Below, piece by piece: positions 48,725-59,665 of a stretch of 64,000 nucleotides of DNA (the stretch's first letter is position 1; each line of letters opens with the position of its first letter). The position numbers were made by a program, and so were the translations under genes. The notes beneath the pieces are model-generated. The model did no database searches. It was not told the DNA's origin and saw only the letters and a program-made list of their open reading frames with translations. Location: positions 496,001 to 560,000 of the IMG/VR virus record IMGVR_UViG_3300046616_000314; one strand, given 5' to 3'.

Positions 48725-48977
48725 GCTAGCAAACTCCAAGCCGCCCGCTGTCCAGGCAAAGCAATACGATTGCTCCGACGACAAGCCCGCTGACTTGCCC
48801 GCCGACGCCGTTCTTGCGACGTGGGATGCTAATAAAATTTTTGAATGGGGTTCGAAGGCTTGGAAGTGGGGTGACTCATGCTCAAAAAAACTGAGCTACA
48901 ACCAACACTACCAAGCCTGCAAAGATGGTGACAAAAAGGAATGTACCTATGTCAACCAGTTGTCGAAGAAACCCTAA
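48654..48977 (+). CDS. Putative outer-membrane lipoprotein spanin (Rz1-like)
   Basis: Lipobox LASC, Pro-rich, extra Cys; overlaps the 3' end of the Rz-like gene. Confidence 0.55.
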   Translation: MMMICCVALASCGTIKRNPETKIKLANSKPPAVQAKQYDCSDDKPADLPADAVLATWDANKIFEWGSKAWKWGDSCSKKLSYNQHYQACKDGDKKECTYVNQLSKKP

Positions 48978-49255
48978 CCAAATTTCAGCCGGAAATGTAC
49001 CATTTGGTCTTCGTCGTGGAAAGTGACTTTCCACCATTGTTTTCCATCTTCGTCGTAGATCACCGAACGCTCGACAACGGCGTATCCCATGATCCGGGGT
49101 GAATTTTCGTGAAACCACTTTCCCGCTTCAAAATGGATACATAAATGTTCTTCGGGGGTGAACTGGCTGGTGAACACATAGAAAGCCTTGTGCCCCGGTT
49201 CAAAGAGAACCGTAACATGCTTGCTGGTGTCCACTCGCCGTCCGTTCATCAGCAT
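48974..49255 (-). CDS. LKW-family small protein
   Basis: WFHEN...FHDEDQMVHFRLKFG. Confidence 0.75.
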   Translation of the reverse strand: MLMNGRRVDTSKHVTVLFEPGHKAFYVFTSQFTPEEHLCIHFEAGKWFHENSPRIMGYAVVERSVIYDEDGKQWWKVTFHDEDQMVHFRLKFG

Positions 49256-49581
49256 TACTTGGCTTCCACGAACCCGGCGATGATATGACGAGCGGTTTCT
49301 TCACTGACCGAATCGATAGCCAGGACCATCGTAGACGGAATCATTTGTTCCGCGTCCTGAATCTTTTGGAAGTTGTCATCGTAGGCGGGCTGATAGGACG
49401 GGACCAGAAGGACCGTGTAGCCCTGCGCTTCGTTGCGGAACGACCGAACCTTGGTGCCGTTCTTACGAGCCAGGAGCATCACCAGATTGGCGTACAGAGC
49501 GTTCGGATAGAAATCCACGCCGCGATACACACCCTTGCTGGTGCGACGAATGACTTGAGCCGGTTCCTTGATCTCGCGCAT
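49255..49581 (-). CDS. Hypothetical protein
   Basis: AAGGA RBS; coupled to the downstream gene. Confidence 0.7.
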   Translation of the reverse strand: MREIKEPAQVIRRTSKGVYRGVDFYPNALYANLVMLLARKNGTKVRSFRNEAQGYTVLLVPSYQPAYDDNFQKIQDAEQMIPSTMVLAIDSVSEETARHIIAGFVEAK

Positions 49582-49643
49582 GTCAGTTCCTTATGTATCT
49601 AACCAATACATACCTTTTAACACGCTAGAGAGTTATGTCAAGG

Positions 49644-49922
49644 CTATTCTTCAGTAGCCGAAATGCTATTGCCGTCACCCTGCCATTTCATCAAGAACAT
49701 GGCTTGTTCATCTTCTTCGAAGAAAACGATATCGGCACTGTAATATGGAGGTCTCGCACCCCCGCTAGTAGAGTAGCCCGCCGCAAAGACTTGTACGCCT
49801 TCAACCATTCGTGCAGTGGGCATTTTCTGACTGAGCCATTCTTTCATTTCCCAAATGGAGTCAGCATCTTTGAAGACAACTTTTACAAAGTCTTCGCAGT
49901 TCATGAGCTTAGCGATATTCAA
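49644..49922 (-). CDS. LKW-family small protein
   Basis: WLSQK...FFEEDEQAMFLMKW. Confidence 0.75.
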   Translation of the reverse strand: MNIAKLMNCEDFVKVVFKDADSIWEMKEWLSQKMPTARMVEGVQVFAAGYSTSGGARPPYYSADIVFFEEDEQAMFLMKWQGDGNSISATEE

Positions 49923-49925
49923 AAT

Positions 49926-51053
49926 TTAACCTTTTTCAATTTCCAAATTCAAACCCAAACGCTTAATGCACGGAAGTTGCAAGACCCAGGCTTTGACGGC
50001 ATCGAAGCTTTCGAATTCCGAATGCCCATCCGGGTACGAAGGATTTTCGTAATCATAGTTCCAGTATAATACCATACGCAGTTGTCCACCGGTATAATAT
50101 CTTCCCTCCGAACCACTGGCGAAGATTTCGAAACGCTGACCCCACAGACCCATGTTGGTATCAACGTTCTCGTGGGTAGCAATGTAGCCATCCCAGGCAT
50201 ACATCATAGCACCATCCAAGAAGCCTCGTACGGCGCCATGCGGCTTAAGCAATCCAGCAAACTCTACGCGAGAAGGATTTGAATAGACTTCAACCGGACC
50301 ATCGTCACCCTTGAAACCACCTTCAAATTTTTCATCCAAAGTTTTTTGGGATGCGAGCTTAACGTCAGCCGGGTCAAAGACAACCAAGGTCTTGATAGCA
50401 GCTTGGCGGAAACCACCCGCGTCTTGTTCCATGACAAGACTATCGTAGCCTTCAGCCTTCAAAAATTTAGTTGCGTAATGGCGAGCCTTCGCGGCATTCT
50501 CGCGCTCGACCTTTCTCCATCGACGCAATAATTCATCTAAATTTTTATAAGCTTGGTTTCGTGCTTCTCTATTTCCTTCATTTCGTTCTGCAAAATCGGT
50601 TGCTTTTTCGGCTTCCTCGAATTTGTGTTTAAGGCGTTTGTCATCCTCAACCATCACTTCGATAGTTGCGGCGTATAAAGGATCGCGATGAAGGAAGTCG
50701 GATAGTTCAGCCCGATTGCGTACGAACAATGGGTTCTTGGCGCGCGTATAGAAACGCATCTGCGCACGTTGGTTGACATCAATATGACCAAGACCGATGT
50801 CATTCATATTGAACTTGAAGAACACGCCATCGGGCATTTGTTCATCCGTCCCGCGCGCTTCTACGCGCCCCAGGTCGAAACCGTTTGCTTTGATGGAGTC
50901 TACGTTTTGCTTTCCGGTCTGGTGGAAGATCGGGATAGGACCACCGGAACCCTTGAAGATGCCATCACCGAACCATGCTGCAAAAGCCGGGTCTGTGTCT
51001 AGAATGGATTCGGGACGATGAAAGTCCTCAAGAAGATTTAGGAGATCGCGCAT
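49926..51053 (-). CDS. ART-PolyVal-like (ADP-ribosyltransferase fold) domain protein
   Basis: FAAWFG.G.....PIPIFHQT...GF, GVFF, FYTRAKNPL, GYDSLV, LVVFDPADVK. Confidence 0.6.
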   Translation of the reverse strand: MRDLLNLLEDFHRPESILDTDPAFAAWFGDGIFKGSGGPIPIFHQTGKQNVDSIKANGFDLGRVEARGTDEQMPDGVFFKFNMNDIGLGHIDVNQRAQMRFYTRAKNPLFVRNRAELSDFLHRDPLYAATIEVMVEDDKRLKHKFEEAEKATDFAERNEGNREARNQAYKNLDELLRRWRKVERENAAKARHYATKFLKAEGYDSLVMEQDAGGFRQAAIKTLVVFDPADVKLASQKTLDEKFEGGFKGDDGPVEVYSNPSRVEFAGLLKPHGAVRGFLDGAMMYAWDGYIATHENVDTNMGLWGQRFEIFASGSEGRYYTGGQLRMVLYWNYDYENPSYPDGHSEFESFDAVKAWVLQLPCIKRLGLNLEIEKG

Positions 51054-51056
51054 TCA

Positions 51057-58113: not shown

Positions 58114-58168
58114 AATTTTCTCAGTTTCCTACAGGTGTGATTGTGCCACGAATGGCGTGTTTCGAATA

Positions 58169-58200
58169 CTATTTATCGCAGAACGATAGCCCATGGTCAA
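58169..58200 (-). promoter_or_regulatory. Promoter of the leader/tRNA operon
   Basis: TTGACC-N17-GATAAATAG, same architecture as 62846. Confidence 0.7.
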
Positions 58201-58244
58201 TAAAAAAATTCGCTTTCGTCAACTTTTTTATAACCCATTGATTT

Positions 58245-58595
58245 CTAACCAAATTTTATCTTACATAGGGCATAATCGTATTGCCAAATGTCGTAGTCTC
58301 CTTCAAACCAAACGCCTTTTTCTGAGACATCATCCCAACTGAATGCGGACCCCACGGTTTCGACTCTCCAATCGGTCGTGAAGAGGATATGATTCTTGAC
58401 TTCCGTGGGACCTAGAAAATCGTCTCGGACTTTCCGTGGTATAAAAGTACGATGATATGCGTATTGTTTGGTTTCAACCGGACCTTCCCACACGCCCAAG
58501 AAGGAACCGGAGCGATATTTTACATCGTTGCTGGACATGGCTAATTGCATGTGTTCGACCATACGCTTAGCGTCGTCGGTATCTACTAATCTCAT
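58245..58595 (-). CDS. LKW-family small protein, divergent
   Basis: VWFEGDYDIWQYDYALCKIKFG. Confidence 0.65.
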   Translation of the reverse strand: MRLVDTDDAKRMVEHMQLAMSSNDVKYRSGSFLGVWEGPVETKQYAYHRTFIPRKVRDDFLGPTEVKNHILFTTDWRVETVGSAFSWDDVSEKGVWFEGDYDIWQYDYALCKIKFG

Positions 58596-58930
58596 CTACC
58601 TAATGCCCAAACCATTTGGAATGCTTCGCGATCCTCTGCGCTAGAGAACCACATATACGCAACGTACTCTTTTCTTTTACCGATTTTGCGTTGAATGACA
58701 CAACCGGTGAAGGGACCAACTTCAAGCCGTCTTAGGGTGTCGGAAAAGCCGCCGCCTTTACTAAACACAAAAAATTTATGCGCCCATTTCAATTCGTATT
58801 TTCTATGAAAATATTTTATGTCGCCCCAGTTCATGTGAGTGCGTTCACCGCGATCTGGCGTGATCGTAAAATAATTTGCGGGTTGGTCCTCTGGATCAAA
58901 CAGAACCAGAACCGGAGTCTTATTATCCAC
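58592..58930 (-). CDS. LKW-family small protein, divergent
   Basis: WFSSAEDREAFQMVW. Confidence 0.65.
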   Translation of the reverse strand: MDNKTPVLVLFDPEDQPANYFTITPDRGERTHMNWGDIKYFHRKYELKWAHKFFVFSKGGGFSDTLRRLEVGPFTGCVIQRKIGKRKEYVAYMWFSSAEDREAFQMVWALGR

Positions 58931-59318
58931 GCGGGCACAACCAATTTTGGTGATCGTAATCTGAAAACTTGAGTTTCAAGAAGGCGATATCATCCATGAC
59001 CGGGACGAAGCTTCTTCCGGCAAATCGCACAAACACGGTTTCATTATTGACTCCCGTATGGAAGTGAGCCGTCCATGAAATGTTGTGGTCCGTGTGAATG
59101 AACCGAATGGAGTCTCGGGGATGCCAGGGAATACCCATGGTATATTCGCGAGACCATTCAACGCGAACGCCCGGCATGACATCTTCAACCACAGTCAGTT
59201 CTTTAATATCTTTTGCGGTTCGTTCATGAACTGAAATGACACCATGATCGTTCATGTAGCTCATGAACTTTTCGATGATGATGATGTCTTCTTCCATGAG
59301 ATCGCCATCGATTTTCAT
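58923..59318 (-). CDS. LKW-family small protein, divergent
   Basis: MDDIAFLKLKFS. Confidence 0.65.
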   Translation of the reverse strand: MKIDGDLMEEDIIIIEKFMSYMNDHGVISVHERTAKDIKELTVVEDVMPGVRVEWSREYTMGIPWHPRDSIRFIHTDHNISWTAHFHTGVNNETVFVRFAGRSFVPVMDDIAFLKLKFSDYDHQNWLCPRG

Positions 59319-59665
59319 AGCAGCAATCTCGCTTTCACCATGTCTTCTTCATTTTCAAAAAAGAAAACGAGCGCGATTATACCATTCTCGATAATACCCT
59401 CTTTGGTAACTGGACCCTTGGAAGTTTCAAACTCGAAATCCCAACGATCAACAAACGTCTTGTTTGTCAGCTTGGGAATGAAGTCATGGAAGCTTACCAA
59501 AGGATTAGGGGTACGAACCACCATCTTGAAATCTGTTCGCACACCCATATGCAAACCTTTTTTCCGAAGCTCATGACGCCATAGGAAAAGATTATAGATC
59601 GTGAACCCAGGTTGACGAGTGCGGAAAGCCGCAATCCATGAGATCGGAAAACCAAACGTGCTCAT
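59315..59665 (-). CDS. LKW-family small protein, divergent
   Basis: FFFENEEDMVKARLL. Confidence 0.65.
   Translation of the reverse strand: MSTFGFPISWIAAFRTRQPGFTIYNLFLWRHELRKKGLHMGVRTDFKMVVRTPNPLVSFHDFIPKLTNKTFVDRWDFEFETSKGPVTKEGIIENGIIALVFFFENEEDMVKARLLL

What the first reader, a model, noticed from the sequence alone, without database searches (positions are those of the whole stretch)
48974..59665. Massive expansion of a small 'LKW' paralogue family
Seen: about 27 ORFs, mostly 70-130 aa, share W(C/L)xx(N/H) and a C-terminal F.F..EEDA..F.L(K/R)(W/F). About 21 lie in this interval as overlapping tandem genes interleaved with tRNAs; others are at 3613, 4754, 12316, 31691, 42121 and 44603. 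N-termini are highly divergent. Inference: a conserved C-terminal docking element with variable specificity regions, as in an adaptor, anti-defence or host-takeover repertoire binding one common partner.
Basis: partly seen in the sequence, partly recalled or inferred. Interest (0 to 1): 0.65.

Follow-up and report, generated by a model that had tools for sequence, protein, structure and literature searches.

The report
Huge phage's 270-copy small-protein family
The interval is one of many tandem arrays of an unannotated small-protein family that a 561-kb rhizosphere phage carries in about 270 divergent copies (15% of its genome), roughly eight times the largest arrays mentioned in the jumbo-phage papers I read; what the proteins do is unknown.

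Summary
In window 48974-56919 (minus strand), 17 small ORFs match a family profile at E<=1e-3. Two more in the interval are probable members and three are unsupported. Reversed and shuffled ORFs give 0 hits.

The window lies in a 561,116-bp myovirus genome from a rhizosphere metagenome. Its TerL is 57-65% identical to Sinorhizobium phage Phosso, Agrobacterium phage Atu_ph07 and two IMG/VR huge phages. Genome-wide the family has about 270 members covering 84 kb, in runs of up to 33 consecutive genes joined mostly by ATGA stop/start overlaps. No pair exceeds 49% identity.

Pfam, PHROGs, NCBIfam and PDB sequences give no match. A full HMMER search finds 1,233 cluster representatives; the ones I looked up come from metagenomes, some on contigs of 424-442 kb. 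Relatives carry at least 37-53 copies, PA5oct 2, Atu_ph07 1.

AlphaFold gives a compact beta-alpha-beta-beta-alpha domain, ACT/RRM-like, with best Z about 6 and no specific relative. By sequence pattern, the "conserved C-terminal motif" looks like strand 3, a helix cap and the packing face of helix 2, so a fold core rather than a free docking peptide.

Two helix-2 positions are fixed in this phage's copies but differ in relatives, which leaves a shared-partner model open. The function is inferred only; I favour a diversified intracellular binder repertoire.

The parts
48974..49255 (-). family member, 93 aa
   Evidence: HMM E 3.5e-11
49644..49922 (-). family member, 92 aa, with a 10-residue tail after the domain
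   Evidence: HMM E 3.3e-5
51057..51347 (-). family member, 96 aa
   Evidence: HMM E 1.1e-8
51344..51637 (-). family member, 97 aa; 4-nt overlap with the next gene
   Evidence: HMM E 2.5e-7
51637..51933 (-). family member, 98 aa
   Evidence: HMM E 5.2e-9
52065..52361 (-). family member, 98 aa; last gene of a nine-gene uninterrupted run (52065-54554)
   Evidence: HMM E 2.2e-14; run listed
52352..52630 (-). family member, 92 aa; 10-nt overlaps on both sides
   Evidence: HMM E 3.2e-10; overlaps
52621..52941 (-). family member, 106 aa
   Evidence: HMM E 5.4e-13
52970..53284 (-). family member, 104 aa
   Evidence: HMM E 7.8e-10
53281..53505 (-). family member, 74 aa
   Evidence: HMM E 6.6e-9
53502..53756 (-). 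family member, 84 aa
   Evidence: HMM E 2.5e-8
53753..54010 (-). family member, 85 aa; the protein modelled first (b1 15-20, a1 22-45, b2 50-59, b3 62-71, a2 74-84)
   Evidence: HMM E 7.6e-17; AlphaFold mean pLDDT 81
54001..54234 (-). family member, 77 aa
   Evidence: HMM E 9.3e-16
54222..54554 (-). family member, 110 aa; first gene of the nine-gene run
   Evidence: HMM E 3.5e-13
54561..54589 (-). sigma-70-like promoter match (TTGACG, 17 nt, GATAAT, with TG) just upstream of the nine-gene run; a consensus match only
   Evidence: promoter-like sites are not enriched overall
55393..55680 (-). family member, 95 aa
   Evidence: HMM E 5.2e-9
55644..55922 (-). family member, 92 aa
   Evidence: HMM E 2.3e-10
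56593..56919 (-). family member, 108 aa; the second protein modelled (core 62-107 confident, N-terminal 55 residues not)
   Evidence: HMM E 9.4e-13; AlphaFold
58592..58930 (-). possible degenerate member, 112 aa
   Evidence: HMM E 1.3; hhalign 55% over the last 24 profile columns
59315..59665 (-). probable divergent member, 116 aa
   Evidence: HMM E 0.017; hhalign 77.5%
3613..3879 (-). family member outside the interval, 88 aa
   Evidence: HMM E 6.6e-9
4754..5059 (-). family member outside the interval, 101 aa
   Evidence: HMM E 5.7e-8
42001..42570 (+). 189-aa protein with an internal copy of the domain (residues about 82-140)
   Evidence: HMM E 8.3e-6; hhalign 81.5%
44603..45088 (+). probable divergent member, 161 aa
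   Evidence: HMM E 0.0022; hhalign 90%
31691..32257 (-). probable divergent member, 188 aa
   Evidence: HMM E 0.0067; hhalign 70%
51938..52012 (-). tRNA-Lys(UUU) between family genes
   Evidence: ARAGORN; Rfam 75 bits
54741..55327 (-). three tRNA-Leu genes (UAA, CAA, UAG) with an unrelated 84-aa ORF (54971-55225) between them
57198..57835 (-). six tRNA genes: Lys(CUU), Leu(GAG), Leu(CAG), Trp, Arg(UCG), Arg(GCG)
49926..51053 (-). 375-aa non-family gene inside the array, with a weak sub-threshold match to ART-PolyVal (ADP-ribosyltransferase)
   Evidence: Pfam E 2.4e-4, 22.3 bits against a cut-off of 31.2; no PDB sequence match

Best explanation
The interval is one array of a phage-borne multigene family that no reference library names.

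Shown:
- About 270 intact genes encode cytoplasmic proteins with a median length of 96 aa. They share a roughly 50-70-residue domain predicted as beta1-alpha1-beta2-beta3-alpha2.
- The N-terminal arm and the beta2-beta3 hairpin vary freely in sequence and length.
- The genes sit head to tail in co-directional runs of up to 33. Most junctions are ATGA stop/start overlaps, which are typical of translationally coupled genes. Some runs are interleaved with tRNA genes.
- Copies are old and diverged, with at most 49% identity. Nearest paralogues are often neighbours, which points to tandem duplication.
- Conservation is at the protein level.

Inferred from sequence pattern: the conserved residues (W41, F71, S/T-E-E-D-A cap, F80, L82, W84) look like the hydrophobic core and a helix N-cap.

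Inferred function: the family is a repertoire of small intracellular binders on one stable scaffold. Each copy presents different variable surfaces to a different host or competitor target, for host takeover, counter-defence or host-range breadth. The genome-specific fixation of Glu/Asp75 and Lys83 on helix alpha2 suggests one face also serves a function common to all copies in this phage.
For: Family and numbers:
- Real family, not chance: 270 hits against 0 in reversed or shuffled ORFs. An HMM of the 16 window members alone already finds 211.
- Scale: 84,346 bp, 15.0% of the genome. The next largest paralogue cluster has 8 members.
- Phage identity: tail sheath, T4-type TerL and SerRS are in the window. 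TerL is 57% identical to Phosso and Atu_ph07 and 65% to IMG/VR contigs of 415 and 608 kb. CheckV completeness is 97%.

Fold and conservation:
- pLDDT is 81 for an 85-aa member. The core reaches pLDDT 84-92 in a second, 18%-identical member whose N-terminal 55 residues are unconfident.

Gene organisation and evolution:
- Of 175 adjacent same-strand pairs, 69 overlap by 10 nt (mostly AAR-TGG-CTA-TGA, which itself holds an ATGA) and 34 overlap by 4 nt (ATGA).
- Best-partner identity has median 33% and maximum 49%. 23% of members have their best partner within two ranks, against 1.8% at random.
- Synonymous codons at conserved sites follow background usage.
- A near-identical relative in another study differs by 8 synonymous and 4 non-synonymous codon changes.

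Protein properties:
- Only 4 of 270 have a TM-like segment.
- pI spans 4.6-9.4.

Genome-specific signature: positions 83 and 75 separate this phage from its relatives with z 48 and 34. Both residues are present in 200/270 copies here against 1/72 in relatives.

Not detected in virions: the two PA5oct homologues are not among the proteins its record flags as seen by virion mass spectrometry.
Against: - No experiment or homology ties any member to a target, a defence system or an expression phase.
- No RNA run holds the sequence.
- Sigma-70-like promoters are not enriched upstream of the runs.
- The fold is generic (best Z 6.0 and 5.3, below the tool's usual noise level of 7-8), so it says nothing about function.
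- Core and surface assignments come from residue periodicity and secondary structure, not from model coordinates.
- The absence of any recent duplicate is unusual for an arms-race repertoire.
- Small proteins are often missed by mass spectrometry, so non-detection in PA5oct virions is weak evidence.
Confidence: 0.4

Rival explanations
1. Common-partner adaptor model. All copies dock through one conserved face onto a single phage or host hub, and the variable parts recruit different substrates. Poxvirus ankyrin-PRANC and giant-virus F-box families work this way.
For: Acidic residue 75 and Lys83 lie on the same side of helix alpha2 as L79 and L82 (helical-wheel reasoning). They are kept in most of the 270 copies while the rest of each protein has drifted to about 25-30% identity, and relatives use other residues at these two sites. 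Most copies (178 of 270) end within one residue of W84.
Against: Most of the conserved motif appears to be buried fold core. No candidate hub was identified. Positions 75 and 83 are not coupled within a genome (odds ratio about 1). The precise C-terminal end is also what an ATGA overlap with the next gene requires.
Confidence: 0.2
2. Small-molecule-binding domains. The family would act as ACT-like ligand sensors or as sponges for host signalling nucleotides, in the way anti-defence sponges sequester immune signals.
For: In both models the best or near-best structural match is the ACT domain of TyrA: Z 5.5 and 5.3, with 60-69 residues aligned.
Against: The Z values are below the tool's noise level. 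No Pfam ACT match appears in 123 members, even at E<=1. No conserved glycine-rich ligand loop is seen. The model lacks the fourth strand. 270 copies is hard to square with a handful of possible ligands.
Confidence: 0.08
3. Nucleic-acid-binding proteins with an RRM/KH-like sandwich, for example RNA chaperones or tRNA-associated factors, given the interleaved tRNA genes.
For: RRM, KH and ribosomal-protein domains are among the structural neighbours. tRNA genes lie inside the arrays.
Against: Median pI is 6.0, with a wide spread. The best-conserved polar residues are acidic. There are no RNP-type aromatic or basic motifs and no Pfam match. Most arrays elsewhere in the genome have no tRNA genes.
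Confidence: 0.08
4. Largely neutral genome filler. Tandem duplicates accumulated after the capsid enlarged (the headful-packaging ratchet proposed for phage G and 121Q) and now have little individual function.
For: Hua et al. [quoted passage not shown] Neighbouring copies here are often each other's closest relatives.
Against: All 270 are open frames that keep the core residues. Codon data and the 8:4 synonymous-to-non-synonymous ratio indicate purifying selection. No copy pair is recent (at most 49% identity). The family also persists in tens of copies in four related phages.
Confidence: 0.1
5. Packaged virion or internal-head proteins that are delivered with the DNA.
For: Huge capsids of other jumbo phages carry many internal proteins, some of them in paralogous sets (general knowledge, not tested here).
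Against: The PA5oct homologues EST35_0247 and EST35_0275 lack the ESI-MS/MS flag that their neighbours carry. No N-terminal targeting motif is conserved.
Confidence: 0.04

Closest known systems
[quoted passage not shown] 2017, PMC5646251), and the ~35-copy zinc-ribbon expansion in phage G that Iyer et al. 2021 (PMC7824862) called unprecedented
   Same: A lineage-specific expansion of one small gene by tandem duplication in a jumbo myovirus. It adds substantially to genome size.
   Different: This one has about eight times more copies (about 270, 15% of the genome). The copies are deeply diverged (at most 49% identity) rather than 'very similar'. The domain is different: it has no zinc-ribbon pattern, and the 121Q relative GAP32 has no match. 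The family is also shared with related huge phages in tens of copies.
Multigene families of large eukaryotic DNA viruses (ASFV MGF110/360/505; poxvirus ankyrin-PRANC; ankyrin, F-box and BTB expansions in mimiviruses and pandoraviruses)
   Same: Dozens to hundreds of divergent paralogues sit in clustered arrays. They combine a conserved scaffold or docking part with variable parts, and are generally linked to host range and counter-defence.
   Different: The host domain, fold and scale per gene all differ (about 90 aa here). No docking partner is known. The comparison is an analogy from my own knowledge, not homology.
ACT / RRM / ferredoxin-like beta-alpha-beta-beta-alpha-beta domains
   Same: A two-layer alpha/beta sandwich with the same order of the first five elements. 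The TyrA ACT domain is the recurring top structural match (Z 5.3-5.5).
   Different: The fourth strand is absent in the models. There is no sequence-profile match and no ligand-loop or RNP motifs. The Z values are in the noise range.
Unnamed viral 'hypothetical protein' clusters of the ESM Atlas and metagenome proteins ending in ...F.F..E(E/D)DA..FK(L/M)(R/K)W
   Same: These are true homologues. A full HMMER search finds 1,233 cluster representatives at E<=1e-3. Of the top 150, 79 come from elsewhere and nearly all carry the same C-terminal signature, some on contigs of 424 and 442 kb with T4-like genes. The Atlas neighbours are 95-100% viral.
   Different: None is named or studied. Elsewhere the family is seen in a few to a few tens of copies per contig.

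Membership tests
The family itself (unnamed; W(C/L)xxN ... F.F..EEDA..FKLKW domain) | Significant match to the family profile | tested here: met
   17 ORFs in the interval and 270 in the genome at E<=1e-3; 0 in reversed or shuffled controls
The family itself (unnamed; W(C/L)xxN ... F.F..EEDA..FKLKW domain) | Shared predicted fold across divergent members | tested here: met
   Two members 18% identical to each other both give alpha1-beta2-beta3-alpha2 with pLDDT 84-92. Beta1 is present in both but less confident in the second.
Any curated protein family (Pfam-A, PHROGs v4, NCBIfam 20, PDB sequences) | Profile match at or near the curated threshold, recurring among members | tested here: not met
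   123 members were scanned. No family is matched by more than one member and none is near its cut-off. The PDB profile search gives only marginal RanBP2 hits at E about 0.01.
ACT domain | beta-alpha-beta-beta-alpha-beta fold with a ligand-binding loop; Pfam ACT profiles | tested here: not met
   The structural resemblance is only Z 5.3-5.5 and the last strand is missing. No ACT profile hit at E<=1.
RRM / KH nucleic-acid-binding domains | RNP1/RNP2 or GXXG motifs; profile match | tested here: not met
   No profile hits. Conserved residues are core hydrophobics and acidic cap residues.
Jumbo-phage tandem duplication arrays (phage G / 121Q type) | Head-to-tail array of more than 30 paralogues | tested here: met
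   The longest uninterrupted run is 33 genes (genome 373,985-382,836). The next are 17, 10, 9 and 9, and the window holds one of the nine-gene runs.
Jumbo-phage tandem duplication arrays (phage G / 121Q type) | Copies 'very similar', that is recent duplication | tested here: not met
   Maximum pairwise identity is 49% and the median best partner is 33%.
Adaptor families with a common docking partner (PRANC / F-box type) | Demonstrated binding of the conserved part to one hub protein | not testable with these tools
   No hub candidate was found. The only indirect hint is the genome-specific fixation of positions 75 and 83.
Anti-defence proteins (Acr and similar) | Inhibition of a defined defence system, or homology to a known inhibitor | not tested
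   There is no homology to any named family. No anti-defence library was on hand, and PADLOC (which holds defence systems, not inhibitors) was not run.

The most novel reading that the evidence does not exclude
A bacteriophage has built, on an unrecognised ~60-residue scaffold, a eukaryotic-giant-virus-style multigene arsenal of about 270 specificity variants. All of them plug through a genome-specific face of helix alpha2 (Glu/Asp75, Leu79, Leu82, Lys83) into one common phage or host hub. That would be a modular adaptor system for retargeting host proteins or defences, and it could be a major driver of genome gigantism in this clade.
Probability: 0.15. Interest if true: 0.85.

Novelty: new variant of a known kind. 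Interest (0 to 1): 0.68.

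Why it matters
Why jumbo phage genomes get so large, and what their many unknown genes do, are open questions. Here a single unannotated domain accounts for 15% of a 561-kb genome. It recurs in tens of copies in related huge phages, including a cultivable Sinorhizobium phage. The largest arrays mentioned in the papers I read have about 30-35 copies. This gives a concrete, testable handle: one profile annotates hundreds of 'hypothetical' genes at once. Copy number can be compared with genome size and host. Phosso and PA5oct offer laboratory systems for asking whether such expansions are counter-defence or host-range repertoires, adaptors, or filler. 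The scaffold is also a natural example of a minimal fold that tolerates extreme sequence variation.

Tried and rejected
**Searches that found nothing**
- Megablast of the interval against 50,697 phage records found only tRNA matches.
- The word-index protein search found only the phage's own proteins, so the full HMMER search was used.
TerL was used instead to reach relatives.
- tblastn of the best-scoring member against phage records found only Phosso, at E 0.03.
- Pfam on ten long members and ten longer metagenome homologues found no recurrent fusion partner. The single exception is one DUF7448 fusion.
- Two literature searches for a described family, or for DUF7448, found nothing. PA5oct supplements are not held.

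**Structure and binding**
- Foldseek against PDB and BFVD, VIA-align wide (twice) and the ESM Atlas gave only generic ferredoxin-like, ACT, RRM or KH neighbours and unnamed viral clusters.
- The homodimer prediction (two copies of the 85-aa member) returned 'no answer', score 0.00. It is not evidence either way.

**Hits and hypotheses set aside**
- Two long hits of the big search (P0005, P0085) are helicase-associated-domain repeat proteins that match only part of the profile. I set them aside as unrelated.
- Sigma-70 promoter scans showed no enrichment.
- Gene conversion or a nucleotide-level motif as the cause of the conserved 3' ends is rejected. Synonymous codons at conserved sites follow background usage.
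- Purely lineage-specific expansion is not supported by the tree. The genome label changes 58 times against 70-72 in the five label shuffles printed, and far more than the 3 that clean clades would give. With 57 columns the tree is weak.

- Read laying was given 5,901 letters.
- No alternative genetic code was used.
- No broken toxin or animal-virus gene was involved.

Full report

Yes. The ORF list of 48500-60500 shows a nearly unbroken series of minus-strand ORFs of 74-131 aa. Their last residues read F.F..EEDA..F.LK(W/F), then usually one more residue and the stop. I built an HMM from 16 window members and iterated it over every ORF of at least 40 aa in the genome.

- In the interval it finds 17 members, with E from 3e-5 to 8e-17.
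- Elsewhere in the window it finds 3613-3879(-), 4754-5059(-) and an internal copy in 42001-42570(+).
- Reversed and shuffled ORF sets give no hit at the same threshold.

The doubtful ORFs were scored with relaxed HMMER and with hhalign against the family alignment.

| ORF | hhalign probability | Verdict |
|---|---|---|
| 44603-45088 | 90% | probable member |
| 59315-59665 | 77% | probable member |
| 31691-32257 | 70% | probable member |
| 58592-58930 | 55% | possible member |
| 58923-59318 | 24% | not supported |
| 58245-58595 | 7% | not supported |
| 12316-12807 | 5% | not supported |
| 49255-49581 | 0.6% | not supported |

Unrelated neighbouring ORFs score 0.1-0.4%.

Ten tRNA genes lie among the family genes on the same strand. 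They include all five Leu isoacceptors, two Lys, two Arg and Trp.

The assembly is sound. Independently assembled contigs of the source run tile 51000-56900 with zero differences, breaking only at tRNA genes. A run from a different study holds short contigs with 1-5 differences each over six of the genes.

**2. What is the genome?**

The window is bases 496,001-560,000 of a single 561,116-bp contig with 48.1% GC.

- IMG/VR classes it as a virus record, and CheckV rates it 97% complete.
- Its two ends overlap by about 187 bp, so it is probably closed.
- The window encodes a tail sheath, a T4-type large terminase and a seryl-tRNA synthetase. The genome has 36 tRNA genes.
- TerL is 57% identical to Sinorhizobium phage Phosso (469 kb) and Agrobacterium phage Atu_ph07 (490 kb). 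It is 65% identical to two IMG/VR contigs of 415 and 608 kb.
- The only run that holds the stretch in full is a rhizosphere metagenome.

This is a huge myovirus of the Atu_ph07-like group. I infer from its relatives and habitat that it probably infects a soil alphaproteobacterium.

**3.

- Genome-wide the profile finds 270 ORFs at E<=1e-3, and 246 at E<=1e-5. An HMM of the window members alone already finds 211.
- Together they cover 84,346 bp, which is 15.0% of the genome.
- The shared search tool agrees as far as it goes. It raised 302 candidates, scored 150 (its cap), and all 150 matched.
- The genes form 100 runs. The longest has 33 consecutive genes (373,985-382,836), followed by 17, 10, 9 and 9. 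55 genes stand alone.
- No other paralogue cluster in the genome exceeds 8 members.

**4. Anatomy of the genes**

- Of 175 adjacent same-strand pairs, 69 overlap by exactly 10 nt and 34 by 4 nt.
- The 10-nt junctions are mostly AAR-TGG-CTA-TGA (K-W-L-stop). This holds an ATG or GTG inside the K-W codons and, in the same frame, the classical ATGA. The 4-nt ones are ATGA.
- So most junctions are stop/start overlaps, the arrangement typical of translationally coupled genes.
- 178 of the 270 proteins end within one residue of the conserved W/F. That is also what an xxA-TGA junction demands.
- Median length is 96 aa. The domain is C-terminal and is preceded by a median of 25 non-conserved residues, with a maximum of 251.
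- Four of the 270 have a TM-like segment. pI runs from 4.6 to 9.4 with a median of 6.0.

**5. Evolution**

- No two copies exceed 49% identity, and the median best partner is 33%. Even so, 23% of members have their best partner within two positions along the genome, against 1.8% at random. I read this as old tandem duplication followed by deep divergence.
- Synonymous codons at the conserved sites follow background usage. The conservation is therefore at the protein level, and not due to gene conversion or a DNA or RNA motif.
- Against the near-identical relative in the second study, 12 codons differ: 8 synonymously and 4 not, the latter in variable regions. The sample is small and the depth is low, but it points to purifying selection.

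**6. Distribution**

- Pfam-A, PHROGs v4 and NCBIfam give no recurrent hit for 123 members. PDB sequences give nothing either.
- The word-index search found only the phage's own proteins.
- The full HMMER search over 1.84 billion cluster representatives found 1,233 at E<=1e-3. Of the best 150, 73 are this phage's own and 79 come from elsewhere. Nearly all of the 79 have the same C-terminal signature, more often FKLRW.
- Those looked up come from metagenomes. Some are on contigs of 424,547 and 442,236 bp. The first of these also encodes Gp23, IF3, ClpX, gyrase and topoisomerase IV.

Copy numbers found with the same profile:

| Genome | Size | Matches |
|---|---|---|
| This phage | 561 kb | about 270 by my HMM; the shared tool capped at 150 |
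| IMG/VR relative G001 | 415 kb | 53 |
| Phosso | 469 kb | 43 |
| IMG/VR relative G002 | 608 kb | 37 |
| IMG/VR relative G003 | 194 kb fragment | 7 |
| PA5oct | 287 kb | 2 |
| Atu_ph07 | 490 kb | 1 |
| XacN1, GAP32, LR756502 | 385, 359, 642 kb | 0 |

The family is therefore widespread in a clade of huge phages, and it is five to seven times larger here.

A few members have syntenic orthologues in G001 at 50-52% identity, higher than any within-genome pair. Most array members have none.

A FastTree tree of 342 domains shows only weak grouping by genome. The genome label changes 58 times, against 70-72 in the five label shuffles printed. With 57 columns the tree has little power.

**7. Structure**

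AlphaFold2 with the 123-member alignment models the 85-aa member at 53753-54010 with mean pLDDT 81. The elements are beta1 (15-20), alpha1 (22-45), beta2 (50-59), beta3 (62-71) and alpha2 (74-84).

A second member (56593-56919, 18% identical to the first) gives the same alpha1-beta2-beta3-alpha2 core at pLDDT 84-92. Its beta1 is weaker and its first 55 residues are unconfident.

Fold searches find only generic two-layer alpha/beta sandwiches:
- The best Z values are 6.0 and 5.3, below the tool's stated noise level of 7-8.
- The TyrA ACT domain recurs near the top.
- RRM, KH, HPr and dimeric ferredoxin-like proteins follow.
- BFVD and ESM Atlas neighbours are unnamed viral proteins.

I combined the secondary structure with the conservation profile.
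- W41 (92%) lies in alpha1.
- [ILFV]69 and F71 (82%) alternate in beta3.
- S/T/N/D73-E74-E75-D76 is a typical helix N-cap.
- A77, F80 (89%) and W/F/Y84 (98%) form one hydrophobic stripe of alpha2.
- L79 and L82 form a second stripe.

**8. A genome-specific signature**

I compared the 270 copies with 72 copies from G001, G002 and Phosso. Two columns stand far apart from all the others:
- Position 83 is K in 86% of copies here. Relatives have R/F, R/W or T/R/A. The z-score is 48.
- Position 75 is E/D in 86% of copies here and mixed in relatives. The z-score is 34.
- Both residues occur together in 200 of 270 copies here and in 1 of 72 in relatives. This holds in arrays and in single genes alike, and there is no coupling within a genome.
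- Position 81 stays K in all genomes, so this is not a general K/R shift.

Everything else outside the core has drifted to near-random, so these two residues are under a constraint peculiar to this phage. On a helical wheel they flank L79 and L82. I infer a shared function for that face. It could be a common partner, or contact among family members. A homodimer prediction gave no verdict and is not counted either way.

**9. What it most likely does**

Nothing ties any member to a function.

In favour of an intracellular, non-structural role:
- The proteins are soluble.
- The genes sit in compact stop/start-overlapping runs of small genes.
- A weakly ADP-ribosyltransferase-like gene sits inside the window's array (below threshold).
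- PA5oct's two homologues are not among the proteins its record flags as detected in virions.

In favour of a binder repertoire: one rigid minimal scaffold, with free variation of the N-terminal arm and the hairpin in both sequence and length, and a wide charge range.

I therefore favour a diversified set of small binders or modulators of host or competitor proteins, at confidence about 0.4. Neutral filler, ligand sponges, nucleic-acid binders and virion proteins are minor rivals.

**10. Comparison with what is known, and novelty**

[quoted passage not shown] A 2026 review repeats this (PMC13282480).
- A ~35-copy zinc-ribbon expansion in phage G was called unprecedented in 2021 (PMC7824862).
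- The kind of thing is therefore known. The domain family is unnamed. The copy number is about eight times larger. The copies are ancient rather than recent, and the family is shared across a clade.
- I rate it a new variant of a known kind, with interest 0.68. It resembles the multigene families of giant eukaryotic viruses, but that is analogy, not homology.

Noticed in passing
window 49926-51053 (-): A 375-aa gene sits inside the family array. It has a weak, sub-threshold match to the ART-PolyVal ADP-ribosyltransferase family (E 2.4e-4, 22 bits against a cut-off of 31) and no PDB sequence match.
   Followed up: partly
window 1408-2670 (-): Phage-encoded seryl-tRNA synthetase (tRNA-synt_2b E 6e-43 plus the Seryl_tRNA_N domain).
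   Followed up: no
window 51938-57835 and 63142-63819; whole genome: The window has 13 tRNA genes, including all five Leu isoacceptors. The genome has 36, most of them clustered around the contig ends (547-561 kb and 3.9-8 kb) in the same regions as family arrays.
   Followed up: partly
genome 1-187 and 560,930-561,116 (outside the window): The contig's two ends repeat each other over about 187 bp, though not perfectly. The assembly is probably closed even though IMG/VR lists it as linear.
   Followed up: partly
L024:9619-10239 (+) = genome 285,619-286,242: This is the only member fused to a known Pfam domain. DUF7448 (E 1.9e-23) is at the N-terminus with the family domain at the C-terminus. 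It is the sole DUF7448 in the genome, and no paper mentions that domain.
   Followed up: partly
L049:1382-1597 (+) and L050:1467-1688 (+) (Pseudomonas phage PA5oct, EST35_0247 and EST35_0275): The well-studied jumbo phage PA5oct has two single-copy homologues with the WC.EN and F.F..E.(D/E)A..F signature. This offers a laboratory entry point. Neither carries the virion mass-spectrometry flag.
   Followed up: partly
window 51264-56876, run X2 (watershed metagenome): A low-abundance relative with 1-5 differences per short contig occurs in a second, unrelated study. 8 of its 12 changed codons are synonymous.
   Followed up: partly
genome 2,552 / 2,576 (L001): Two family arrays diverge from start codons only 23 bp apart. 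That leaves no intergenic room for separate promoters.
   Followed up: no
P0006, P0009, P0016, P0021 and other metagenome homologues: About fifteen of the top outside hits are 140-200-aa proteins with two tandem copies of the domain. That is what loss of one stop/start junction between neighbouring genes would produce.
   Followed up: no
window 58245-59318 (-): Two ORFs at the far end of the interval (58245-58595 and 58923-59318) end in KIKFG and LKLKF-like tails but do not match the profile. They may be decayed members or chance look-alikes.
   Followed up: yes
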